A stretch of 64,000 bases of DNA. It comes from Lepidodermella squamata. Taxonomy: Eukaryota > Animalia > Gastrotricha. Each line of letters begins with the position of its first letter. Position 1 is the stretch's first letter. The position numbers were made by a program, and so were the translations under genes. The notes below the pieces were generated by a model. That model was not told the origin of the DNA, made no database searches, and worked only from the letters and a program-made list of their open reading frames with translations. The DNA lies in NCBI GenBank assembly GCA_047495785.1, contig JBLDXI010000003.1, positions 1,302,001 to 1,366,000 of the forward strand, read 5' to 3'. This document shows positions 10,432 through 47,418 of this stretch, piece by piece.

Positions 10432-12002
10432 TTATCTAGGAATTGCTTTGACCTTAAAATCAGGCGCAGTATGGACACTTCCCCAATTTCCTTCCTCCAA
10501 TGCAACCTCAGGAGTCGTCAGCACGAACTCGAACCGATGCAGCAAAGCAGTGATAACTAGAAAGTACTCGACACGTGCCAGATTCTCGCCGAGACAAATC
10601 CTTGGCCCCAAGCCAAATGGAAGAAAATGACTCGAATGAGACAGCAACTTGCCATCATCGCCAATCCATCTCTCGGGCAAGAAGTCTAAGGGTCTCTCCC
10701 AATACTCAGGATCACGATGAACTGCGATAACGTTGTACATCACCGACGTGTAGGGCGGGCAGTCGTAGCCGGCAATTTTCGCATACTTCTCAAGATTGCT
10801 ATGAAAAACCCCAAGCGGCACAACGGCAAACAACCGCAGAACCTCATGGAATACCGCATCGATGTACACCAAGGCGGGTCGGTCTGACAGACTTGGCAAG
10901 CGATCTGATTCGATGACCTTATCAATTTCTTCACGGCACTTTGTTTGAACCTCCGGATACTTGCTTAGGTAGAGCATGGTCCAAGTTAGAGCTGTTGAGG
11001 TGGTGTCAGTTCCAGCTAGAAACAAGTCTTCCATAGACCGTGAAAGGTCGTCCAAACTTAGACTTCCCTCAACGTCCTTTTCAGCAGCAATGAAATGGTC
11101 AGGGAAGTCGCGGATCATTTTCGGGTCGAAATCCTTCCTGTGTTCAGCAATCGACTGCTCGAGGATTCCTTTTATAGTGTCATGCAACTCAATATAGGCC
11201 TTGGGCTATTGATAGTAATGCATTTAGTTGAAGAGTGACCTAAGAGGGAATAGGAAATCAATCTTACCTGTTCCGGTGTGATGAGTTTTGAAAGAACTGG
11301 TATCATGAACACTAACGAACTCGCAGCGGTTGTCTTGTTGAAAATGCGATCAATTTGAGACAGAAGATGGATCAACTGCGGGTCATTCATATCCTCGTAC
11401 CTTTTGCCGAAAACCAGTGAACAGATAACATTAGCTACCGTACTGCTCAAGAAATTTCTGGGTTTGAATTCCAAGTCTTTTTTTGAATGGTCGGCGATTG
11501 TCGCAAGTAAATGTTCGACTTCGTCCTGAATTCGAACAACCATCTGTTGGCGACCCATTCCGAAGTCGCGAAGTGCATGCAGAGTGAATCGGCGATTTCT
11601 TTGCCATGTTTCATAGCTCGAGCCCAGCAAGCCTTCGCCAACATCTTCGAATCCGGGTAGGAAGCGTTCAAGTCGGCCGATGAAATTCTTCCCGTTATCC
11701 CCGCTCAGAGTTTCACGAATCAGCCGAGAGTCGTTCATTCCAATCATACGAACGCATCCCATGTAAAATGTGAATACAGGTCCGTAGTTCTGGCCAGTTT
11801 TCAGTAAGGCGATCGGCGCATCGTCGCCTTTGAATTTCGCAAAGTACCACAGACTGCCTAGGAAAGGGATAGGCGTTGGCCCTGGGGGCAGGCGGTACAG
11901 CAGCCAGTCTCGGATGTAGCGAAAAGAGCCGTATAAAAGCACAATGGATGGTATCACGTACTTCCAGGTTGCCAGTAACGTCGACAAATCCAGGAGCTCC
12001 AT
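10432..12002 (-). CDS. Cytochrome P450, clan 2-like; exons 12002-11268 and 11205-10432 (502 aa)
   Basis: PPGP hinge, WxxxR (WQRNRRF), I-helix AGTDTT, ExxR (EVLR), PERW, heme motif FGLGPRICLGE; 62-nt GT-AG intron joins the frames. Confidence 0.95.
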
Positions 12003-25633: not shown

Positions 25634-26832
25634 TCAGTAGTGACCATGGTGTGTCAACTGATAGAAAATTGCGAGATGTATAATCGACAGTGCTCCGAGA
25701 AAAATCGCGAAAGCGTATTTGTCCACATTATGAAAGTCGTTGTACCTCCGCCGATAGAAAGCCAGCATATCGTGATCAAAGCCGTCCTTCGCTGAAACCG
25801 GCCTTTCGACAATATGCCGCAGAAACCAGTAGTAGCAGCAGGTAAACGCCGAGTAAATTGTCACTACAACCCCAAAAATCAATAGAGCTGCTGAATAAAC
25901 GATTATTAGAATGTTCTCAGACGCCTCGGGGATGATTTTATGAATTCCCTCCTGGAATATTTCCATCGCCAAAACAACAGTTAGGGCGTAGACGGGTCGT
26001 TCGGGATGCTCTATAGGCAGCAGAACGCTAAAAGCTTGAACCACTGATATGCAGATGCTAGGCGCCATGATGGAATACCCGAATGGCTCATAGATCCTAT
26101 TTAGGCGGATCTGGAAGGTAGCGCTAGAGACACATACATTATCCCTGTAGGTTTTGGACAGCGTGTTGTCTTCACAGAAAGCAGAAACTTGAGAGTCGAG
26201 GCCGGTAACTCGCCATATCAATGTAGGGGTTGTTAGTTCTTCATCCTGAGGCAATGTGATAGTAGCGCTTGTGAAATTGAAGTTTCGGAGGGATTGCCAA
26301 CTTTCGAAGGTCAACTCACAAACTTGGTCGTCGAATGGGAAGTTCTGATGATCTTCAAGAGGACGAAATAGCAACTTTCAAGAATTTGATTGAAAAACGT
26401 ACGTAAGGAACACCGTGATATCCATCTGCCCCCAGCGGTAATCTCCACAGTTCCATCCTCGAAAGCAACTGGCTTCATTATTTCGGCATTGCGTTCCACT
26501 GCATGCCAAGTCACATCAGAATTGCGGTGTAAGACGTAAGGCCATGTGTCACCTAGCAGCTCCCGGTCGACGTAAAGCATTCCAGTTTTGTTCGCCTTTT
26601 TCGGCCTCTGTTCGACGGCCTTCGACCAAATGCAAGGGTCGTAGTAGCGAAGAATCAAGACTCCCTCGACGGAAAATGACTCGTGATGCTCGTTAACATT
26701 GACCAACTCCCGAATTTGAAACCTTACGTCGACATCAATTGATGAAGTTCTATCGCCATGATTCGTACAGTAATCGGATGATGATAGGCTCGGTCGTAAA
26801 AGAGTTATAAAAATTACAATTTTAAGATACAT
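25634..26832 (-). CDS. Cys-loop ligand-gated ion channel subunit A; exons 26832-26403, 26352-25634 (382 aa)
   Basis: Splicing the 50-nt intron restores Cys-loop CSLHHQNFPFDDQVC (C-x13-C); signal peptide, four TM helices. Confidence 0.88.
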
Positions 26833-26885
26833 TTTTTCCTAAGATGAGTTTCATTAAATGCAACAGCGACTGAATCATAAATAAT

Positions 26886-28255
26886 TTACGACGTCATTGA
26901 AACATAAATTGCGATGTGAATTACTATCAGGAGTATTACAAATACAGCAAAAGCGATATAATCGACATATTTGCACAGAGCTAATTGCTTGTGGTACTTG
27001 GTACGGTCGAAATCGTCAATGCCATTCTCCTTCACATTTGTCGGCAGTTCGATTAAATGTTGCAGGTGCCAGACGTAGCCGCAAGAGGCCGCCGAGTAGA
27101 GGGTAATCAATGCTCCGAAAATTATTACGGCGCTCGTGTATAAAATCACAAGAATCGTCTCAGCAACTGCCGGGATAACCTGTTGCACCGTGCCTTGGAA
27201 AATCGCCATGGCCAGTAAGATAGTAACAGAGTAAATAGGCCGTTCTGGGAAGTGGCTAGGGATTAAAATTGACGTAACTTGAACAACAGCGAGGCTAATG
27301 CATGGTATGAAAATCGAGAATACGTAAGGTGCGGACTTTCGTGAGAATGCGACGTAGTAGTGTAAGCGAGTCGCACACATCACCCGATTAATTTTGCCCA
27401 TGTAGAAGCAGTTTTTGTCGATATCTGCGTACATATCTTCGACGACCCATATCATGGCTGGTGTGGTCAGTTCGGCGCCGAGGTGTTTCACGAAAACAGC
27501 AGATGTGAAATTGAAGTTGTCTTCAGATTCCCATAATTCAAAATCAAACGCGCAGACTTGTGAGTCGAATGGGAATTTACGGTGGCCTGAGAAAACACAA
27601 AACGAGATTCCTTATAGGGGTATAATTCTAGCAAGGTTGAATTCAGTGTTCCAGGTCGAGCATGGTACCTCCTACGCTCAAGGATTCTACTTTACACACG
27701 GGTTCGACTTCATTTCATCTTCTTGGGCGGGCCTTGAAATTTGATCTTGGGATTAGGAGGAATAAAACACTCACTTAACGGGCAGCGAGACGTCCACCTT
27801 CCGCCTGAGTTGACTTCCACTGTTCCATCGGCGAATGCCTTAGGAGGGATCCTTTCAATGTTCTCGTCAATCGCTCGCCAGGTGACGTCGCTATTCATGT
27901 GCAAAATCACCGGCCAAGTGTCCTTCAGGTAATCCTTATCGATGTACAAGTACCCGGTGCTATTCGCCTTGTTAGGACGGACCTTTCGCACCCGTGACCA
28001 GATGCATGGATCAGACCATTGCATTGTGAAAATCCCTTCGATCGTCACTGTTTCTTTAACGTCGTCGACATTGATGAAGTTTGTCATGAAAAAAGTGGCT
28101 GAAATATTGATGGTATTAGGGCGGTCGATGTGATCCGTGCATGATATTGACTCGTCCAAGTTAACTGTCGAATCGAATAATACCGCGTCGCAATGATGTC
28201 TTTGAAGACCGATGAAGGTTAGAAAAAGTATCAGTTTTGCGAACACAGACATCAT
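26886..28255 (-). CDS. Cys-loop ligand-gated ion channel subunit B; exons 28255-27775, 27586-26886 (393 aa)
   Basis: Cys-loop CPLSHRKFPFDSQVC after splicing; pre-M1 FSRK, M1-M2 linker PSHFPER, M4 YVDYIAF. Confidence 0.9.
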
Positions 28256-42710: not shown

Positions 42711-44564
42711 ATGTACACCCTTCATGCAACTGGGTCGATATCTGGACTTGCATCTACCTGCCAAGTCGATGGCGTAGTCAAAGATCTATCTTCAACCACT
42801 CTCAACAGCGCTAAATCATCAAATTCCCCTCAGACCATCCACAAACAAGCTCAACCGGCTCAACGGCACGAAAATATCGACGCTGGTAGTCAAATGATAT
42901 CCTCAGCCATCGCCGAGGCTCGCCGCGTCATTCTAGAGGAGGCGAAGGGCCTGGAGAAGCAGGCTGAAATGATAAATGAATCATTCGCAAGAGCGGCTGC
43001 GGCTCTTCTGGCTATACCTGGCCGCATTATACTGACTGGGCTCGGCAAATCCGGGCAAATTGCGAGGAAACTCGCCTCGACCATGGCGTCGACAGGCTCG
43101 CCGGCTTTCTTTCTCCACCCTGGTGATCTGAACCACGGTGATTTAGGTGCGATTAATCGAGGTGATGCTGTGATTATTCTGTCGCGAAGTGGCGATGTGC
43201 CTGAACTTACCCATGCCATTCTACGGTGCCATCGGCTGGAAATTCTTGTTATTGCGATCACTGCTAAGCCTCGCAGCAAACTGGCGGAGGCAGCCAACGT
43301 TGCAGTAAGCCATTTTTGGAAATATTCAATTCTTTAATCACTTAAATATTAAATATGAGTCTGAACTTGAGGGATTTCCAATAGGGCTCAGTGACCAGAC
43401 GTTAAGCCAATCCTTTTTCTTTAGGCAATCATTAATTCTTCAATCTCCCTCCAATCTCCCATGAGTACTGATCTTATATACAGTGATTAGATCTGGTTTA
43501 CGGAACTGGTTGGAGTGGAAGGGGTTGAAAATTAAAGAAATTCCCCAGGTAATTTTCCAAAAGAAATCTTTCGGCTGTACTAAATTTCATCTAATTCAAT
43601 ACCTGACCATTTCAATCGGTTATTTAACTGGTTAGGGTTAGGTAAGGGTTAGGTTAGGGTTAGACGACTTAAAATTGGGGATTTGGAACTGATTGGAATA
43701 ATTTTGTACAGAAATCTTTGATCTTGGTACTGAATTCAATAATTTGGTAATGCATTCACTGTATCCCAACTTTCCAAGAAGAAACCAGCTGTTTCCTCTA
43801 TACTTACCAATAATCTCGGAAACAATTTTCGAGAAAGTATCTTCCTTTAGGCCATCATCAAAGTTCCATTTTTGAATTTTCAGCTGCTGATTCCTGACAT
43901 TCCTGAAGCTTGTCCTGTTGGCCTTGCTCCGACCACCTCGACAGTATGCACCCTGGCAATGGGCGACGCGGTGAGTGCTTTGAATCTTTGAAGTAATCTC
44001 AATAATGTGATTCTTATACCCCAGCTTGCTATGTATATGATGAAACGGCGCAATTTCGGCGCTGCTGATTTCCGAATCAACCACCCTGGTGGCAATATCG
44101 GCCGTCGAGCGGTCACAGTTCGCGAGCTGATCGCAAAGGACGGTGCATCCAGCGCCAACAAAGTGCCCACGCTAATGTCGTCATGCAAACTCGGCGAAGC
44201 CTTGCCCGTCCTCCTATGCAGCAGGGCTGGGATGGTCGGCATTGTTGATGATACTGGGAAGCTAGTCGACGCTTTGACAGACAGAGACGCCGGTGCAGCT
44301 ATGATGTCATCGTCTGATGCTAAGAAAACGATGACAGTCGGAGATGTTTTGGAGGATATGAAGGTGAAACGGCTGCAAAGTGGCGTGTCGATTTCGGACT
44401 TTTCGACGCAAGAAGGCGACCAAGTTGCCAGTGCCGTTGCTAAGATGTCGGCTCTTGATCTCCGCGGGGTTTTCGTGGTCGATGAAGCTGGGTATGCGGT
44501 CGGTTATCTGAGCCTCAGTGACTGCCTCGAAGCTGGAATTTCCCCAACTGCTGTAGCAAAATAA
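42711..44564 (+). CDS. kdsD: KdsD/KpsF/GutQ-family sugar-phosphate (arabinose-5-phosphate) isomerase, SIS + CBS pair; exons 42711-43304, 43884-43970, 44025-44564
   Basis: GLGKSGQIARKLASTMASTGSPAFFLHPGDLNHGDLG, EACPVGLAPTTST..LAMGDALA, DFRINHPGGNIGRR, then CBS-like repeats (VGIVDDTGKLV..TDRD; VFVVDE..AVG). Two phase-0 GT-AG introns. Confidence 0.92.
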
Positions 44565-45759
44565 CAAAACCCAAGTCATAATTTGATTAACGCAAATTTT
44601 ATTTTATTGCCTAGACCGGGCCGGAAAATTATTAATGTAAAATATGGATAAATCAGGCATGGCATTCAACGTTTTGCATCGTGATGTCAAATTCATCATT
44701 GTTGCATTTTTATATTGGAACTTTGTGCCATGAAGCTGCTATTCTATTTCACTGTAACAAGCGTTTTGATGCCCGATGTGCTGCTACTTATACTGGAAGT
44801 ACTCTTTTTGAAAGTGCTCTGTTGATGTCTACTTATTCTGCTGATAAAAGGAACTAATAAAAGTGATAAACATTGGTACATGGATTTTAGTTTTGAGAAA
44901 ATGCTGACGGTCCCGCGATCGGAGAACTTGGAACTAGTAACCTAGCAACCGTTGCTAAGATAAAGCATCGATATTATTCCTTATTTCTACCGGTCTGTGA
45001 TGGTGTCAGAGTCTCAAGAGTTAAGCCCCTTTAATATTTCCATAGCTCTATTCAAGAAATGCCTTTCAATAGCCTAAAATTTCGAATGTAAAACCTTTGT
45101 TCTAAGAGATGGTGAAAAGTAATAAGCTTCTATCAAAATGTGGGTTGTAAAAACTTGTTTTGAACTGCAACAGATCAAATTATTTTTAGAGGCAGCATGC
45201 CGCCCACTGAGCATGAACAGCACCTGGGTTTTTGGTTTTTGCCCGAAAACCACTGACAACTTCTGCTACACCCCTGCAATTCATTCAACGCTTTCGCTAA
45301 CTTAGCCATGATCAGAGGATTAAGAGAGAATTGAAACGTGACTATGACCTTGATGTGCCCTTATCGTCGCCCACTGAGCATGAATAGCCACGCAACTGTT
45401 GCAGCTTGTTTACCCGCTTTTTTATAGCGTTGGCGTCAGCTCCTGTGGTCAATATAAAGGCCGCAAAAAAGCCTCAGAATATCCAAGTGCTAATTTATTA
45501 GCTAAATTTCAATCACCATGAGTCTGCGTAGATTTCTCGCGATTAAATATCTTTCAGTTCTGGCTTTGAGGTCATTTTCTAGGTTCAATTTTAAATTTAG
45601 TTTATGACCCAGACCCCAGACGTCTAGAGTGAAATTGCCACTTTTAAAGCGCGCGCCTTATTGCTAAATTTTTATCAATGAGTAAATTCTTAAGAAATTC
45701 TATTATACATGCATTTTTTGTTAATCTTTAGACCTTTTTCTTAAACTCAAAACTCAAAA

Positions 45760-47418
45760 ATGCGAGTGAATTACTTCCCGATGATCGCCATGATTTCGAT
45801 AGGTCTGGCTATTGATGCTTCAGCCTTCAACTACTCGACGGCTGGAATTGCGGACATTCAATCAGCAATCAGGGTTGGCTACAAAACTTGTCATCAAATT
45901 GTCGACGCCTACCTAGAGCGAATCGAGATGGCCAACAGAGCGAACCTCAAAGCGATCATCGCAGTCAATCCAAACGCTACACGTGAGGCTGATGCGTTAG
46001 ACAAGTTCTGGAATGAAAATGGGAGATTCAAGGGCCGGCTTCACTGCGCTCCTCTGATTGCTAAAGACAGCATAGATGTTCGTGGAATCCCGACTACCAA
46101 CGGCCTGAATGCTTTCAAGAGCCAAGTCCCTCAGAAAGACGCGACTGCCGTGAAAAATTGTAAAGATCAAGGAGCTATCTTCATCGGAAAGGCTAACATG
46201 TCGCCGCTGTCTGATAAGGAAGCTTGGGGTAACAGTGAAACTGGAGGTTTGATTCGTAATCCCTTCGCCATGAACTACACAACTTACGGATCGAGTGGTG
46301 GAAATGCCGCTGCGGTAGCTGCTGGCCTGGCTGTTGGAGGTTTGGCTACTGAGACCGGAGTTTCGATCAATATACCTTCATCTGCTAATGGCGTAGTCGG
46401 TATCCGACCTCCAGTTGACCTTCTCAAGGCTGCAAATGCTCGGGATGGGGTTATGCCAAACTCTTTCCACCAAGACGTTGTCGGTCCTATTGCGAAATCT
46501 GTTGCAGATGCTGTTTTGATTCTTGACGGAATTATCGGTAAAGAAGGCGAGTTCAGCAGTTCTGCCTTTCATCCGCGTGGCTTGGAGAATTTAACCATCA
46601 ACATTTTCCAACTGATGGCCTACGGAAGCTTTCCGATTAGCCCTGTCGCCATTTATTCAGTCGACCAAAAGATTCAACGAATTTTTACTAACGCTGCAGC
46701 AAACATGGCGAAGTCAAATGCCGCGGTTAAGAACGTATCTGTCGATTTTGCAGCGGCTGCTCCGTACATTTTCAACATGTTCGCAATGGGAACGGCCAGC
46801 TGTATTCCTCAATGGAGAAACGTTTACTTGAATGACTCAACGCGTTTCAACTCATCAGCTTTCAGGAGCTTCGAGAGTGTTGTAGCTTCAAAGAAACTGC
46901 CAGCGTACTATCAAGCAAATTGGGAATCTGCCTTGAATCAATCTAAAATTTCAGGGCAATGTGAAAAGGAGTCTACGGCATTCGAAACTGCTGTCGCAGC
47001 TATGATTCAAAATGGCATTAATCCTATTTTAGCCGGAGCTGATTTGGCAATCTGGCCAACTTTGCCTGAGTTCCCAGCGAAACTGGGCAATGATTCGATC
47101 GCAAGAGATTGGTCATCTGCGACTACGGCGCCTATCAATTTGGTATTACTGGCTGCGTGGTCTGGCTATCCGTCCCTCACGATTCCGATGGGCTTCAGCG
47201 ACCCGACCAGGGATGCGCCTCAAGGTCTCCCGATTGGTCTATTCATGATGTCGAAGCCAGAGAAACTGTCACAACTCTTGAGAGCGGCCTATGCTTTCCA
47301 GGAGAAATACGGGGCTGCCAAATACCCGGCCAACTTCAATTCAGGACCTCGTTTGCCTCAGATCGACGAAATCTGCGGCGTACTGCGAAGTTTGCGCCTC
47401 GAAGCACGATTCTGCTAA
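45760..47418 (+). CDS. Secreted amidase-signature family enzyme, intronless
   Basis: Signal peptide; GRLHCAPLIAKDSID (Lys), GKANM, GSSGG, TETGVSINIP (nucleophile Ser), GYPSLTIPMG, GLPIGL. Confidence 0.9.
   Translation: MRVNYFPMIAMISIGLAIDASAFNYSTAGIADIQSAIRVGYKTCHQIVDAYLERIEMANRANLKAIIAVNPNATREADALDKFWNENGRFKGRLHCAPLIAKDSIDVRGIPTTNGLNAFKSQVPQKDATAVKNCKDQGAIFIGKANMSPLSDKEAWGNSETGGLIRNPFAMNYTTYGSSGGNAAAVAAGLAVGGLATETGVSINIPSSANGVVGIRPPVDLLKAANARDGVMPNSFHQDVVGPIAKSVADAVLILDGIIGKEGEFSSSAFHPRGLENLTINIFQLMAYGSFPISPVAIYSVDQKIQRIFTNAAANMAKSNAAVKNVSVDFAAAAPYIFNMFAMGTASCIPQWRNVYLNDSTRFNSSAFRSFESVVASKKLPAYYQANWESALNQSKISGQCEKESTAFETAVAAMIQNGINPILAGADLAIWPTLPEFPAKLGNDSIARDWSSATTAPINLVLLAAWSGYPSLTIPMGFSDPTRDAPQGLPIGLFMMSKPEKLSQLLRAAYAFQEKYGAAKYPANFNSGPRLPQIDEICGVLRSLRLEARFC

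What the first reader, a model, noticed from the sequence alone, without database searches (positions are those of the whole stretch)
42711..44564. Intron-containing KdsD/KpsF arabinose-5-phosphate isomerase in an animal
Seen: a complete SIS+CBS enzyme with two clean spliceosomal introns. The residues matching the catalytically important Lys (GKS) and His (HGDLG, HPGG) are intact. Known: this family makes A5P, the Kdo precursor for LPS and capsule in Gram-negative bacteria (and for plant/algal wall Kdo); animals are not known to make Kdo. Inference: a domesticated horizontally acquired gene, either part of an animal Kdo pathway or running in reverse to salvage arabinose-5-P from bacterial or algal food into the pentose phosphate pathway. 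The introns argue against contamination.
Basis: partly seen in the sequence, partly recalled or inferred. Interest (0 to 1): 0.82.

Follow-up and report, generated by a model that had tools for sequence, protein, structure and literature searches.

The report
Domesticated bacterial KdsD gene in invertebrate
An invertebrate chromosome carries a real, spliced and expressed gene for a bacterial-type sugar-phosphate isomerase (arabinose-5-phosphate isomerase) that animals are not known to have; it probably came from bacteria long ago, and what the animal uses it for is still open.

Summary
A three-exon gene (42711-43304, 43884-43970, 44025-44564, + strand) encodes a 406-aa protein with a SIS domain and a CBS pair. 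It matches bacterial KdsD/KpsF/GutQ end to end, and all five KdsD catalytic residues are kept.

Contigs of an RNA-type run join the exons exactly at both GT..AG introns and end in poly(A) after an AATAAA signal. Two alleles appear in both DNA and RNA, and all 10 coding differences are synonymous. The same contig holds P450 and Cys-loop channel exons and a LINE, so this is a host gene, not contamination.

An exhaustive search of 1.84 billion representative proteins found only three close clusters. All three lie on eukaryote-like metagenome contigs, and their genes share intron 1 at the same codon. Everything else is bacterial, at about 50% identity or less.

In trees the four eukaryotic copies form one long-stemmed clade on the alphaproteobacterial side of a 100/100 split. 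The exact sister is unresolved, and I could not fetch plant, fungal or algal homologues.

Old horizontal acquisition and domestication are supported. A role in Kdo synthesis or in salvage is untested: no kdsA, kdsB or kdsC was seen.

The scan had already noted two further KdsD-like genes on other pieces of this genome (s1-387844, s1-379768).

The parts
42711..43304 (+). Exon 1. Start codon, an N-terminal extension of about 61 aa that bacterial proteins lack, and most of the SIS domain, including the GLGKSG motif (K113), H142 and E165.
   Evidence: ORF and splice donor. Pfam SIS E=1e-16; NCBIfam KdsD model positions 16-143, E=3e-33. RNA-type contigs cover the exon from 42725.
43305..43883 (+). 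Intron 1: 579 nt, GT..AG, phase 0. Its position is shared by all four family members.
   Evidence: Joint 43304>43884 in an X2 contig. Introns of 61, 76 and 63 nt sit at the same codon in L001, L003 and L006.
43574..43846 (.). High-copy interspersed repeat with TTAGGG-like tracts inside intron 1. It accounts for this intron being about 500 nt longer than in the relatives.
   Evidence: In DNA run X1 the summed contig depth rises from about 90 to as much as 5846 here, and many loose ends run into TTAGGG-type sequence.
43884..43970 (+). Exon 2: 29 codons carrying the PEACP...APTTS segment of the SIS domain with E206.
   Evidence: NCBIfam KdsD model positions 151-173. Both flanking joints lie in one X2 contig. 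Alignment.
43971..44024 (+). Intron 2: 54 nt, GT..AG, phase 0. It is present only in the window copy.
   Evidence: Joint 43969>44024, with the cut one base to the right fitting as well, in X2. L001, L003 and L006 are uninterrupted here.
44025..44564 (+). Exon 3: end of the SIS domain with the NHPGG motif (H247), a complete but diverged CBS pair with an inserted helix between the two CBS motifs, and the stop codon.
   Evidence: NCBIfam KdsD model positions 174-283; Pfam CBS E=7.5e-8. AlphaFold2 model with mean pLDDT 83.5 shows two beta-alpha-beta-beta-alpha units. Foldseek hits are CBS pairs, including those of putative arabinose-5-phosphate isomerases 4o9k and 3k2v.
44565..44878 (+). 3' UTR of 314 nt, with AATAAA at 44856-44861 and the poly(A) addition site near 44878.
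   Evidence: An X2 contig ends at 44878 followed by 21 A. Signal position.

Best explanation
This is a genuine nuclear gene of an invertebrate that other scan notes take for a rotifer-like spiralian. It encodes a KdsD/KpsF/GutQ-type D-arabinose-5-phosphate isomerase. An ancestor of a small group of animals took the gene from a bacterium, with an Alphaproteobacteria-type KdsD as the closest kind. The gene then gained a phase-0 intron and an N-terminal extension of about 60 aa, duplicated into a small family, and has been kept under purifying selection. The window copy later gained a second intron and a repeat insertion in intron 1. By homology, the protein should interconvert D-ribulose-5-phosphate and D-arabinose-5-phosphate. 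In bacterial KdsD the active site is built from K59, H88, E111 and E152 of one subunit and H193 of a neighbouring subunit; the matching residues here are K113, H142, E165, E206 and H247. The diverged CBS pair would act as the regulatory module. Shown here: gene structure, splicing, polyadenylation, both alleles expressed, residue conservation, narrow distribution, bacterial affinity. Inferred: the enzyme activity. Open: the physiological direction, meaning whether it supplies arabinose-5-phosphate for a rare sugar such as Kdo or D-arabinose, or drains arabinose-5-phosphate into the pentose phosphate pathway.
For: Gene model and domains. Spliced and polyadenylated contigs in run X2, introns essentially uncovered, and two haplotype contigs whose depths add up to the flank depth in both DNA (X1) and RNA (X2). 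All 10 coding differences are synonymous third-position changes. Catalytic residues are conserved in all four family members. The full-length spliced protein matches a home-made profile of 37 bacterial KdsD in one stretch (profile positions 11-326 of 327) at 314 bits; held-out bacterial proteins score 436-490 and E. coli KdsD 450. Complete CBS-pair fold. An exhaustive search of 1.84e9 representatives finds only P0001-P0003 as close relatives (197-210 bits), with the next hit at 129 bits. Those three lie on contigs with kinase, ankyrin and Cys-loop channel genes and share intron 1. L001 against L003 gives dN/dS 0.18. In the trees the four copies form one clade (100/100), placed on the Alphaproteobacteria side of a 100/100 split from the Gamma/Beta/other group that holds E. 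coli KdsD. The best matches among bacterial species genomes are mostly Alphaproteobacteria at 45-54% identity over the first 137 residues of the SIS part. Host linkage: P450 and Cys-loop channel exons and a LINE on the same contig.
Against: No activity was measured. No downstream Kdo gene (kdsA, kdsB, kdsC or a transferase) was found in the window, and none is mentioned in the scan's notes on about 1,950 windows of this genome. The pieces scored separately against NCBIfam sum to about 174 bits for TIGR00393, below its cutoff of 203.7. The CBS pair has lost the usual GDLRR-type motif and carries an insert. The stem of the animal clade is about 2 substitutions per site, so its placement is open to long-branch artefacts, and its sister group is unresolved. 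No plant, algal or fungal homologue was in the tree. The RNA contig starts at 42725, 14 nt after the proposed ATG, so the 5' end and the use of that ATG are not shown.
Confidence: 0.7

Rival explanations
1. The gene is ancient in eukaryotes and was inherited vertically with massive loss, or it was taken from another eukaryote (alga, plant or fungus) rather than directly from a bacterium.
For: Plants have a Kdo pathway (PMC5811610). [quoted passage not shown] No eukaryotic reference sequences were in my trees. The long stem of the animal clade hides its origin. An alphaproteobacterial affinity could in principle reflect mitochondrial ancestry.
Against: The exhaustive search shows a gap from 197-210 bits (three family clusters) to 129 bits or less. 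Every named protein among the next-best hits is bacterial. The closest long branch, P0241, sits in a bacterial kdsD-kdsB-kdsC-kdsA cluster. No protein labelled as eukaryotic appeared among the 120 word-search hits.
Confidence: 0.12
2. The family has changed function. It is still a folded SIS+CBS protein, but it acts on another sugar phosphate or serves as a sensor or regulator rather than as an arabinose-5-phosphate isomerase.
For: Family-wide changes lie next to active-site motifs: SRSGDVPE instead of SNSGE(T/S)xE, and GDLNHG instead of GEAxHG. The CBS pair is diverged with an insert, an N-terminal extension has been added, and the score is about 140 bits below bacterial proteins. No Kdo-pathway partner was seen.
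Against: All five catalytic residues and the phosphate-binding GxGKSG and SxSG motifs are invariant in four copies that are saturated at synonymous sites. That is what continued catalysis of the same kind of reaction predicts.
Confidence: 0.15
3. Contamination or assembly artefact: a bacterial or symbiont gene wrongly placed in the animal assembly.
For: The protein is of bacterial type. Its coding GC (53%) is above that of the window (about 43%).
Against: There are two spliceosomal introns that are removed in RNA, a poly(A) tail, and two alleles in DNA and RNA at single-copy depth. A host repeat sits inside intron 1. P450, Cys-loop channel, ankyrin, TIR and LINE genes lie on the same contig. 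Relatives in other samples share the intron.
Confidence: 0.01

Closest known systems
Bacterial D-arabinose-5-phosphate isomerases KdsD / GutQ / KpsF (EC 5.3.1.13; NCBIfam PRK10892, PRK11543, TIGR00393; structures 2xhz, 3etn, 5uqi; CBS pairs 3k2v, 3fna, 4o9k)
   Same: The architecture is the same: a SIS domain followed by a CBS pair, colinear over the whole length. Identity is 35% to E. coli KdsD and about 40-42% to alphaproteobacterial proteins. K59, H88, E111, E152 and H193 are all conserved.
   Different: It is encoded in a eukaryotic chromosome with two spliceosomal introns and a poly(A) signal. It has an N-terminal extension of about 60 aa rich in Ser, Thr and Lys. The CBS pair is diverged, with an insert of about 13 aa predicted as an extra helix. 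No neighbouring kdsC or lpt genes are present. It falls below the curated family cutoffs when scored exon by exon.
Plant Kdo pathway (arabinose-5-phosphate isomerase, Kdo-8-P synthase and CMP-Kdo synthetase, making Kdo for rhamnogalacturonan II)
   Same: It is a eukaryote using bacterial-type Kdo enzymes encoded in the nucleus (PMC5811610; PMC2486460 listed).
   Different: Animals have no rhamnogalacturonan II. No further pathway genes were seen here, and I could not fetch plant sequences to compare.
Horizontally acquired bacterial metabolic genes in invertebrates, best known from bdelloid rotifers (for example PMC4632278, PMC4498783; compendium PMC13342648)
   Same: A bacterial-type enzyme gene that has gained introns, is expressed, lies among other foreign-looking genes, and belongs to a genome the scan flags as rich in transfer candidates.
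   Different: I found no paper that reports this enzyme family as transferred into an animal. The compendium's gene tables were not available to search.
Eukaryotic GFAT acting as a side-activity arabinose-5-phosphate isomerase (PMC11301363), and yeast API1 (PMC12280177)
   Same: Both are eukaryotic routes between Ru5P and A5P. GFAT also works through a SIS-type isomerase domain. API1 is described as a homologue of bacterial arabinose-5-phosphate isomerase in a non-plant eukaryote.
   Different: The gene here is a dedicated KdsD-type enzyme, not GFAT. The GFAT paper states that eukaryotes have no obvious homologues of the prokaryotic enzyme. I did not compare sequences with API1.

Membership tests
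KdsD/KpsF/GutQ arabinose-5-phosphate isomerase | N-terminal SIS (sugar isomerase) domain | tested here: met
   Pfam SIS E=1e-16 on exon 1. PDB 2xhz (E. coli KdsD SIS domain) E=4e-27.
KdsD/KpsF/GutQ arabinose-5-phosphate isomerase | C-terminal pair of CBS motifs (Bateman module) | tested here: met
   Pfam detects only the second CBS motif (E=7.5e-8). The AlphaFold2 model (pLDDT 83.5) shows both units, and Foldseek matches CBS pairs, including the isomerase CBS pairs 4o9k and 3k2v with target-normalised TM-scores of 0.78-0.80.
KdsD/KpsF/GutQ arabinose-5-phosphate isomerase | Catalytic residues of E. coli KdsD: K59, H88, E111, E152, H193. The residue list comes from my knowledge of the published KdsD structure and mutagenesis work; K59 is the residue that appears as Ala in the 2xhz chain. 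| tested here: met
   The matching residues are K113, H142, E165, E206 and H247. All are invariant in the window protein, L001, L003, L006 and 7 bacterial proteins.
KdsD/KpsF/GutQ arabinose-5-phosphate isomerase | Whole-protein score above the curated NCBIfam cutoff (TIGR00393: 203.7 bits; KdsD equivalog: 505 bits) | tested here: inconclusive
They score 99.8, 30.7 and 43.7 bits, about 174 in total, for TIGR00393, and about 180 for the KdsD model. Against my own profile of bacterial KdsD the spliced protein scores 314 bits, compared with 436-490 for bacterial proteins.
KdsD/KpsF/GutQ arabinose-5-phosphate isomerase | Interconverts D-ribulose-5-phosphate and D-arabinose-5-phosphate | not testable with these tools
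   This needs an enzyme assay or rescue of an E. coli kdsD gutQ mutant.
Kdo biosynthesis pathway | Co-occurrence with KdsA, KdsC, KdsB and a Kdo transferase | tested here: inconclusive
   No KdsC-like sequence in the window or in L001-L006. No scan note on this genome mentions kdsA, kdsB, octulosonate or cytidylyltransferase. A genome-wide search was not possible.
Horizontally acquired, domesticated gene in an animal | Physically linked to host genes and carrying host gene features (introns, poly(A), allelic variation) | tested here: met
Horizontally acquired, domesticated gene in an animal | Branches among donor-group sequences and is missing from other animals | tested here: inconclusive
   The animal clade lies on the Alphaproteobacteria side of a 100/100 split, but its sister is unresolved and no other eukaryotes were sampled. 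Only three close clusters were found among 1.84e9 representatives. No close relatives were found in JGI metagenome contigs or IMG/VR viral contigs.

The most novel reading that the evidence does not exclude
This invertebrate lineage makes its own arabinose-5-phosphate-derived sugar, either Kdo or a D-arabinose-containing glycan or metabolite. The expanded KdsD-like family would be the first committed step, which would give animals a sugar so far credited only to bacteria, plants, algae and some protists.
Probability: 0.13. Interest if true: 0.8.

Novelty: new member of a known kind. Interest (0 to 1): 0.5.

Why it matters
Arabinose-5-phosphate isomerase is the entry step to Kdo, a hallmark sugar of Gram-negative envelopes and plant pectin. 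A recent study of D-arabinose synthesis states that eukaryotes have no obvious homologue of the bacterial enzyme (PMC11301363). Here an animal keeps a small family of such genes intact, spliced, expressed and under selection. That gives a concrete handle on whether some animals make or salvage arabinose-5-phosphate-derived sugars. The shared intron also shows the acquisition predates the family's duplications. Against this, horizontally acquired bacterial enzymes are already well documented in rotifer-like animals, so the kind of event is not new. The weight of the finding depends on the downstream pathway, which remains unknown.

Tried and rejected
1. A scan of viral contigs (IMG/VR) for close relatives, with giant viruses that carry Kdo genes in mind, found none.
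2. A scan of JGI metagenome contigs with family-specific motifs gave only a 28% match and two short matches.
3. I tried to name the organism. Run and organism names were coded. The neighbouring amidase had no named animal relatives; its third-best hit carries a TSA prefix (GEZN01) that occurs in a paper on the amoeba Paulinella. Sample accessions were found in no paper. I therefore rely on earlier scan notes for 'rotifer-like spiralian' and did not test that.
5. The supplement tables of the metazoan transfer compendium are not held as text.
6. A look-up of scan findings by sequence returned nothing.
7. dN/dS between the window copy and its relatives could not be computed because synonymous sites are saturated; only L001 against L003 was usable.
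The exons were searched apart, and the spliced protein was analysed only in scripts.
9. The N-terminal extension shows no hydrophobic stretch by eye, so I saw no sign of a signal peptide. No predictor was run.

Full report
**1. What is in the sequence**

On the + strand an ATG at 42711 follows an in-frame TAA by three bases. It opens a reading frame that runs to a GT donor at 43305. A second coding piece (43884-43970) and a third (44025-44564, ending in TAA) follow AG acceptors preceded by pyrimidine-rich stretches. Both introns are GT..AG and phase 0, of 579 and 54 nt.

The spliced CDS is 1221 nt and encodes 406 aa. Scored separately, the three exons match the NCBIfam KdsD model one after another, at model positions 16-143, 151-173 and 174-283. 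Pfam finds SIS on exon 1 and CBS on exon 3. The window holds one copy only.

**2. It is transcribed, spliced and polyadenylated**

Two public runs hold the stretch. Run X1 is DNA-like and covers everything at a summed depth of about 72-92.

Run X2 covers only the exons and the 3' UTR.
- One 536-nt contig joins 43304 to 43884 and 43969/70 to 44024/25, exactly the predicted junctions.
- A 608-nt contig ends at 44878 followed by 21 A, 22 nt after the AATAAA at 44856.
- The depth inside the introns is explained by the few exon bases in the edge bin and by a repeat, so the introns look efficiently removed.

X2 is labelled RNA only as a guess, but spliced, A-tailed contigs show that it holds RNA-derived sequence. 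The first X2 contig starts at 42725, 14 nt after the proposed ATG. Contigs cannot show a transcript start, so the use of that ATG is inferred. The support is that all four family members have an open extension of about 55-65 codons with a Met at a similar place.

**3. Alleles and selection**

Between 44183 and 44321, both X1 and X2 carry two contigs that differ at 8 sites. Their depths add up to the flank depth (35+55 in DNA, 108+125 in RNA). This looks like two haplotypes of a single-copy gene, both expressed.

With two further differences seen in X2, all 10 coding differences are third-position and synonymous. Roughly a quarter of random coding changes are synonymous, so ten out of ten has a chance of about one in a million under neutrality (my estimate). 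Between two relatives, L001 and L003, dN/dS is 0.18 at dS 1.08. All other pairs are saturated.

**4. The protein**

I aligned the spliced protein with E. coli K-12 KdsD, fetched from NC_000913, and with alphaproteobacterial proteins.
- It is colinear from residue 64 to 399.
- Identity is 35% to E. coli KdsD and 39-42% to the best bacterial proteins.
- K59, H88, E111, E152 and H193 of KdsD correspond to K113, H142, E165, E206 and H247, and are invariant in all four eukaryotic copies.
- That these are the catalytic residues is my knowledge of the KdsD structure and mutagenesis work. The 2xhz chain does show Ala where the query has K113.

Against a profile that I built from 37 bacterial KdsD proteins, the spliced protein scores 314 bits in a single stretch covering profile positions 11-326 of 327. 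The 37 held-out bacterial proteins score 436-490, and E. coli KdsD scores 450. So it is a full-length but clearly diverged member.

The C-terminal half was folded with 31 homologues (mean pLDDT 83.5). It forms two beta-alpha-beta-beta-alpha units, a complete CBS pair, with an extra helix (residues 105-119 of exon 3) in the family-specific insert between them. Foldseek matches CBS pairs, including those of putative arabinose-5-phosphate isomerases 4o9k and 3k2v.

Three features differ from the bacterial enzymes:
- an N-terminal extension of about 60 aa rich in Ser, Thr and Lys, with no hydrophobic stretch;
- family-wide substitutions beside the active-site motifs;
- loss of the usual GDLRR-type motif in the first CBS unit.

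**5. It sits in a host chromosome**

The same 64-kb contig carries:
- a two-exon cytochrome P450 (10.4-12.0 kb);
- Cys-loop ligand-gated channel exons (25.6-27.5 kb);
- ankyrin and TIR genes;
- a LINE with endonuclease and reverse transcriptase (37.7-40.4 kb).

Intron 1 contains a high-copy repeat with TTAGGG-like tracts. Scan notes place this window on a scaffold that extends more than 2 Mb beyond it, and they call the genome a compact invertebrate, probably rotifer-like spiralian. I did not test that assignment.

**6. Relatives**

A word-based search with exon 1 found three proteins at 59-66% identity, all from ENA metagenome assemblies. After them come bacterial KpsF/GutQ proteins at about 50% identity over the SIS domain, named Phenylobacterium, Steroidobacteraceae, Stellaceae and Alphaproteobacteria.

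The exhaustive search of 1.84 billion representatives gave the same picture: 210, 198 and 197 bits for those three, then 129 bits and below.

The three proteins lie on contigs that also carry a kinase exon, long ankyrin genes and a Cys-loop channel gene, so those contigs are eukaryotic and probably animal. I rebuilt their genes.
- Each has a single intron of 61-76 nt at exactly the codon where the window has intron 1.
- None has intron 2.
- Three distinct copies occur in one sample.

The intron therefore predates the duplications. Synonymous sites between the main copies are saturated, so the acquisition is old.

Scans of viral contigs and of JGI metagenome contigs found no further close members. 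The scan's own notes list two more intron-bearing KdsD-like genes on other pieces of this genome.

**7. Where it came from**

A scan of one genome per bacterial species returned 80 loci. The best matches were mostly Alphaproteobacteria, at 45-54% identity over the first 137 residues of the SIS part.

Trees of full-length proteins were built with IQ-TREE under LG+C20, first with 92 rows in a quick search and then with 62 rows in a careful search.
- The four eukaryotic copies form one clade (100/100) on a stem of about 2 substitutions per site.
- The clade lies on the side of a 100/100 split that holds all 26 Alphaproteobacteria.
- It is apart from the Gamma/Beta/other group that includes E. coli KdsD.
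- Within that side its position is unresolved.
- The tool warns that it meets the long branch P0241, a protein that sits in a bacterial kdsD-kdsB-kdsC-kdsA cluster.

Caveats:
- The 80 loci were the best of a capped list, so sampling leans towards look-alikes.
- The bootstrap had not fully settled.
- Four bacterial rows have odd amino-acid composition.
- No plant, algal or fungal homologue was available, so a eukaryotic donor or very old vertical descent is not excluded.

**8. What it does**

The enzyme-level reading is aldose-ketose isomerisation between Ru5P and A5P. It follows from full-length homology and intact catalytic residues, and is inferred, not shown.

The physiological role is open. 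No kdsC-like sequence is in the window or in the related contigs. None of the 5,364 first-stage notes on about 1,950 windows of this genome mentions kdsA, kdsB, octulosonate or cytidylyltransferase, although three KdsD copies were flagged. That mildly disfavours a complete Kdo pathway, but it is far from proof.

The alternatives are salvage of arabinose-5-phosphate from bacterial or algal food into the pentose phosphate pathway, supply of D-arabinose for another product, or a shifted substrate.

**9. Literature**

I found no paper reporting this enzyme in an animal or as a transfer into animals. A 2024 study states that eukaryotes have no obvious homologues of the prokaryotic D-arabinose-generating enzymes, and shows that GFAT can do the isomerisation as a side activity (PMC11301363). 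A 2025 paper describes a yeast gene, API1, homologous to the bacterial isomerase and not essential (PMC12280177). Kdo is described for bacteria and plants (PMC5811610).

**10. Verdict**

Old horizontal acquisition and domestication are well supported, with a bacterial, Alphaproteobacteria-like source most likely. The pathway role is untested.

As a kind of event this is a new member of a known class: a bacterial enzyme gene domesticated in an invertebrate genome that the scan flags as rich in transfer candidates. I score interest at 0.5. It would rise sharply if downstream Kdo or D-arabinose genes, or the sugars themselves, were found.

Noticed in passing
window 45760-47418 (+): A single-exon amidase gene (552 aa, Pfam Amidase E=4e-60) starts 0.9 kb after the KdsD poly(A) site. 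Its best relatives are unnamed contig proteins (41-48% identity) and a EukProt transcript whose TSA prefix (GEZN01) occurs in a Paulinella paper (39%). After those come bacterial amidases at about 30%. It may be a second foreign-derived gene next door.
   Followed up: partly
window 1981-24682, both strands: Six long intron-poor ORFs (380-672 aa) all match the bacterial BamB-like PQQ_2 beta-propeller family. This is a tandem family of bacterial-looking propeller proteins.
   Followed up: no
window 43574-43846 (inside intron 1): A short interspersed repeat with TTAGGG-like tracts. In DNA run X1 the summed contig depth reaches 5846 against about 90 for the flanks, and loose ends run into (CCCTAA)n. 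This fits the telomere-repeat-associated elements noted elsewhere in this genome.
   Followed up: no
window 42725-42777 (+): An out-of-frame ATG at 42725 opens a 17-codon ORF, and the first RNA-type contig begins exactly there. If transcripts started downstream of 42711, the main ORF would begin at Met62 (42894) behind this small upstream ORF. The 5' end is unmapped.
   Followed up: partly
window 25634-27491 (-) and L004 3450-4586 (-): Cys-loop ligand-gated channel genes lie near the KdsD-like gene both in the window (about 15 kb upstream) and on a related metagenome contig (about 2 kb downstream). This may be remnant synteny or coincidence.
   Followed up: no
window 10432-12002 (-): A cytochrome P450 gene in two overlapping ORFs (Pfam p450 E=4e-71 and 3e-28), presumably two exons.
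   Followed up: no
L088 280-5374: The bacterial protein that the tree puts next to the animal clade (P0241) lies in a compact kdsD-kdsB-phosphatase-kdsA cluster beside a Glycos_transf_4 gene, on a contig from run SRR12487036. This looks like a capsule or LPS sugar operon of an uncultured bacterium.
   Followed up: partly
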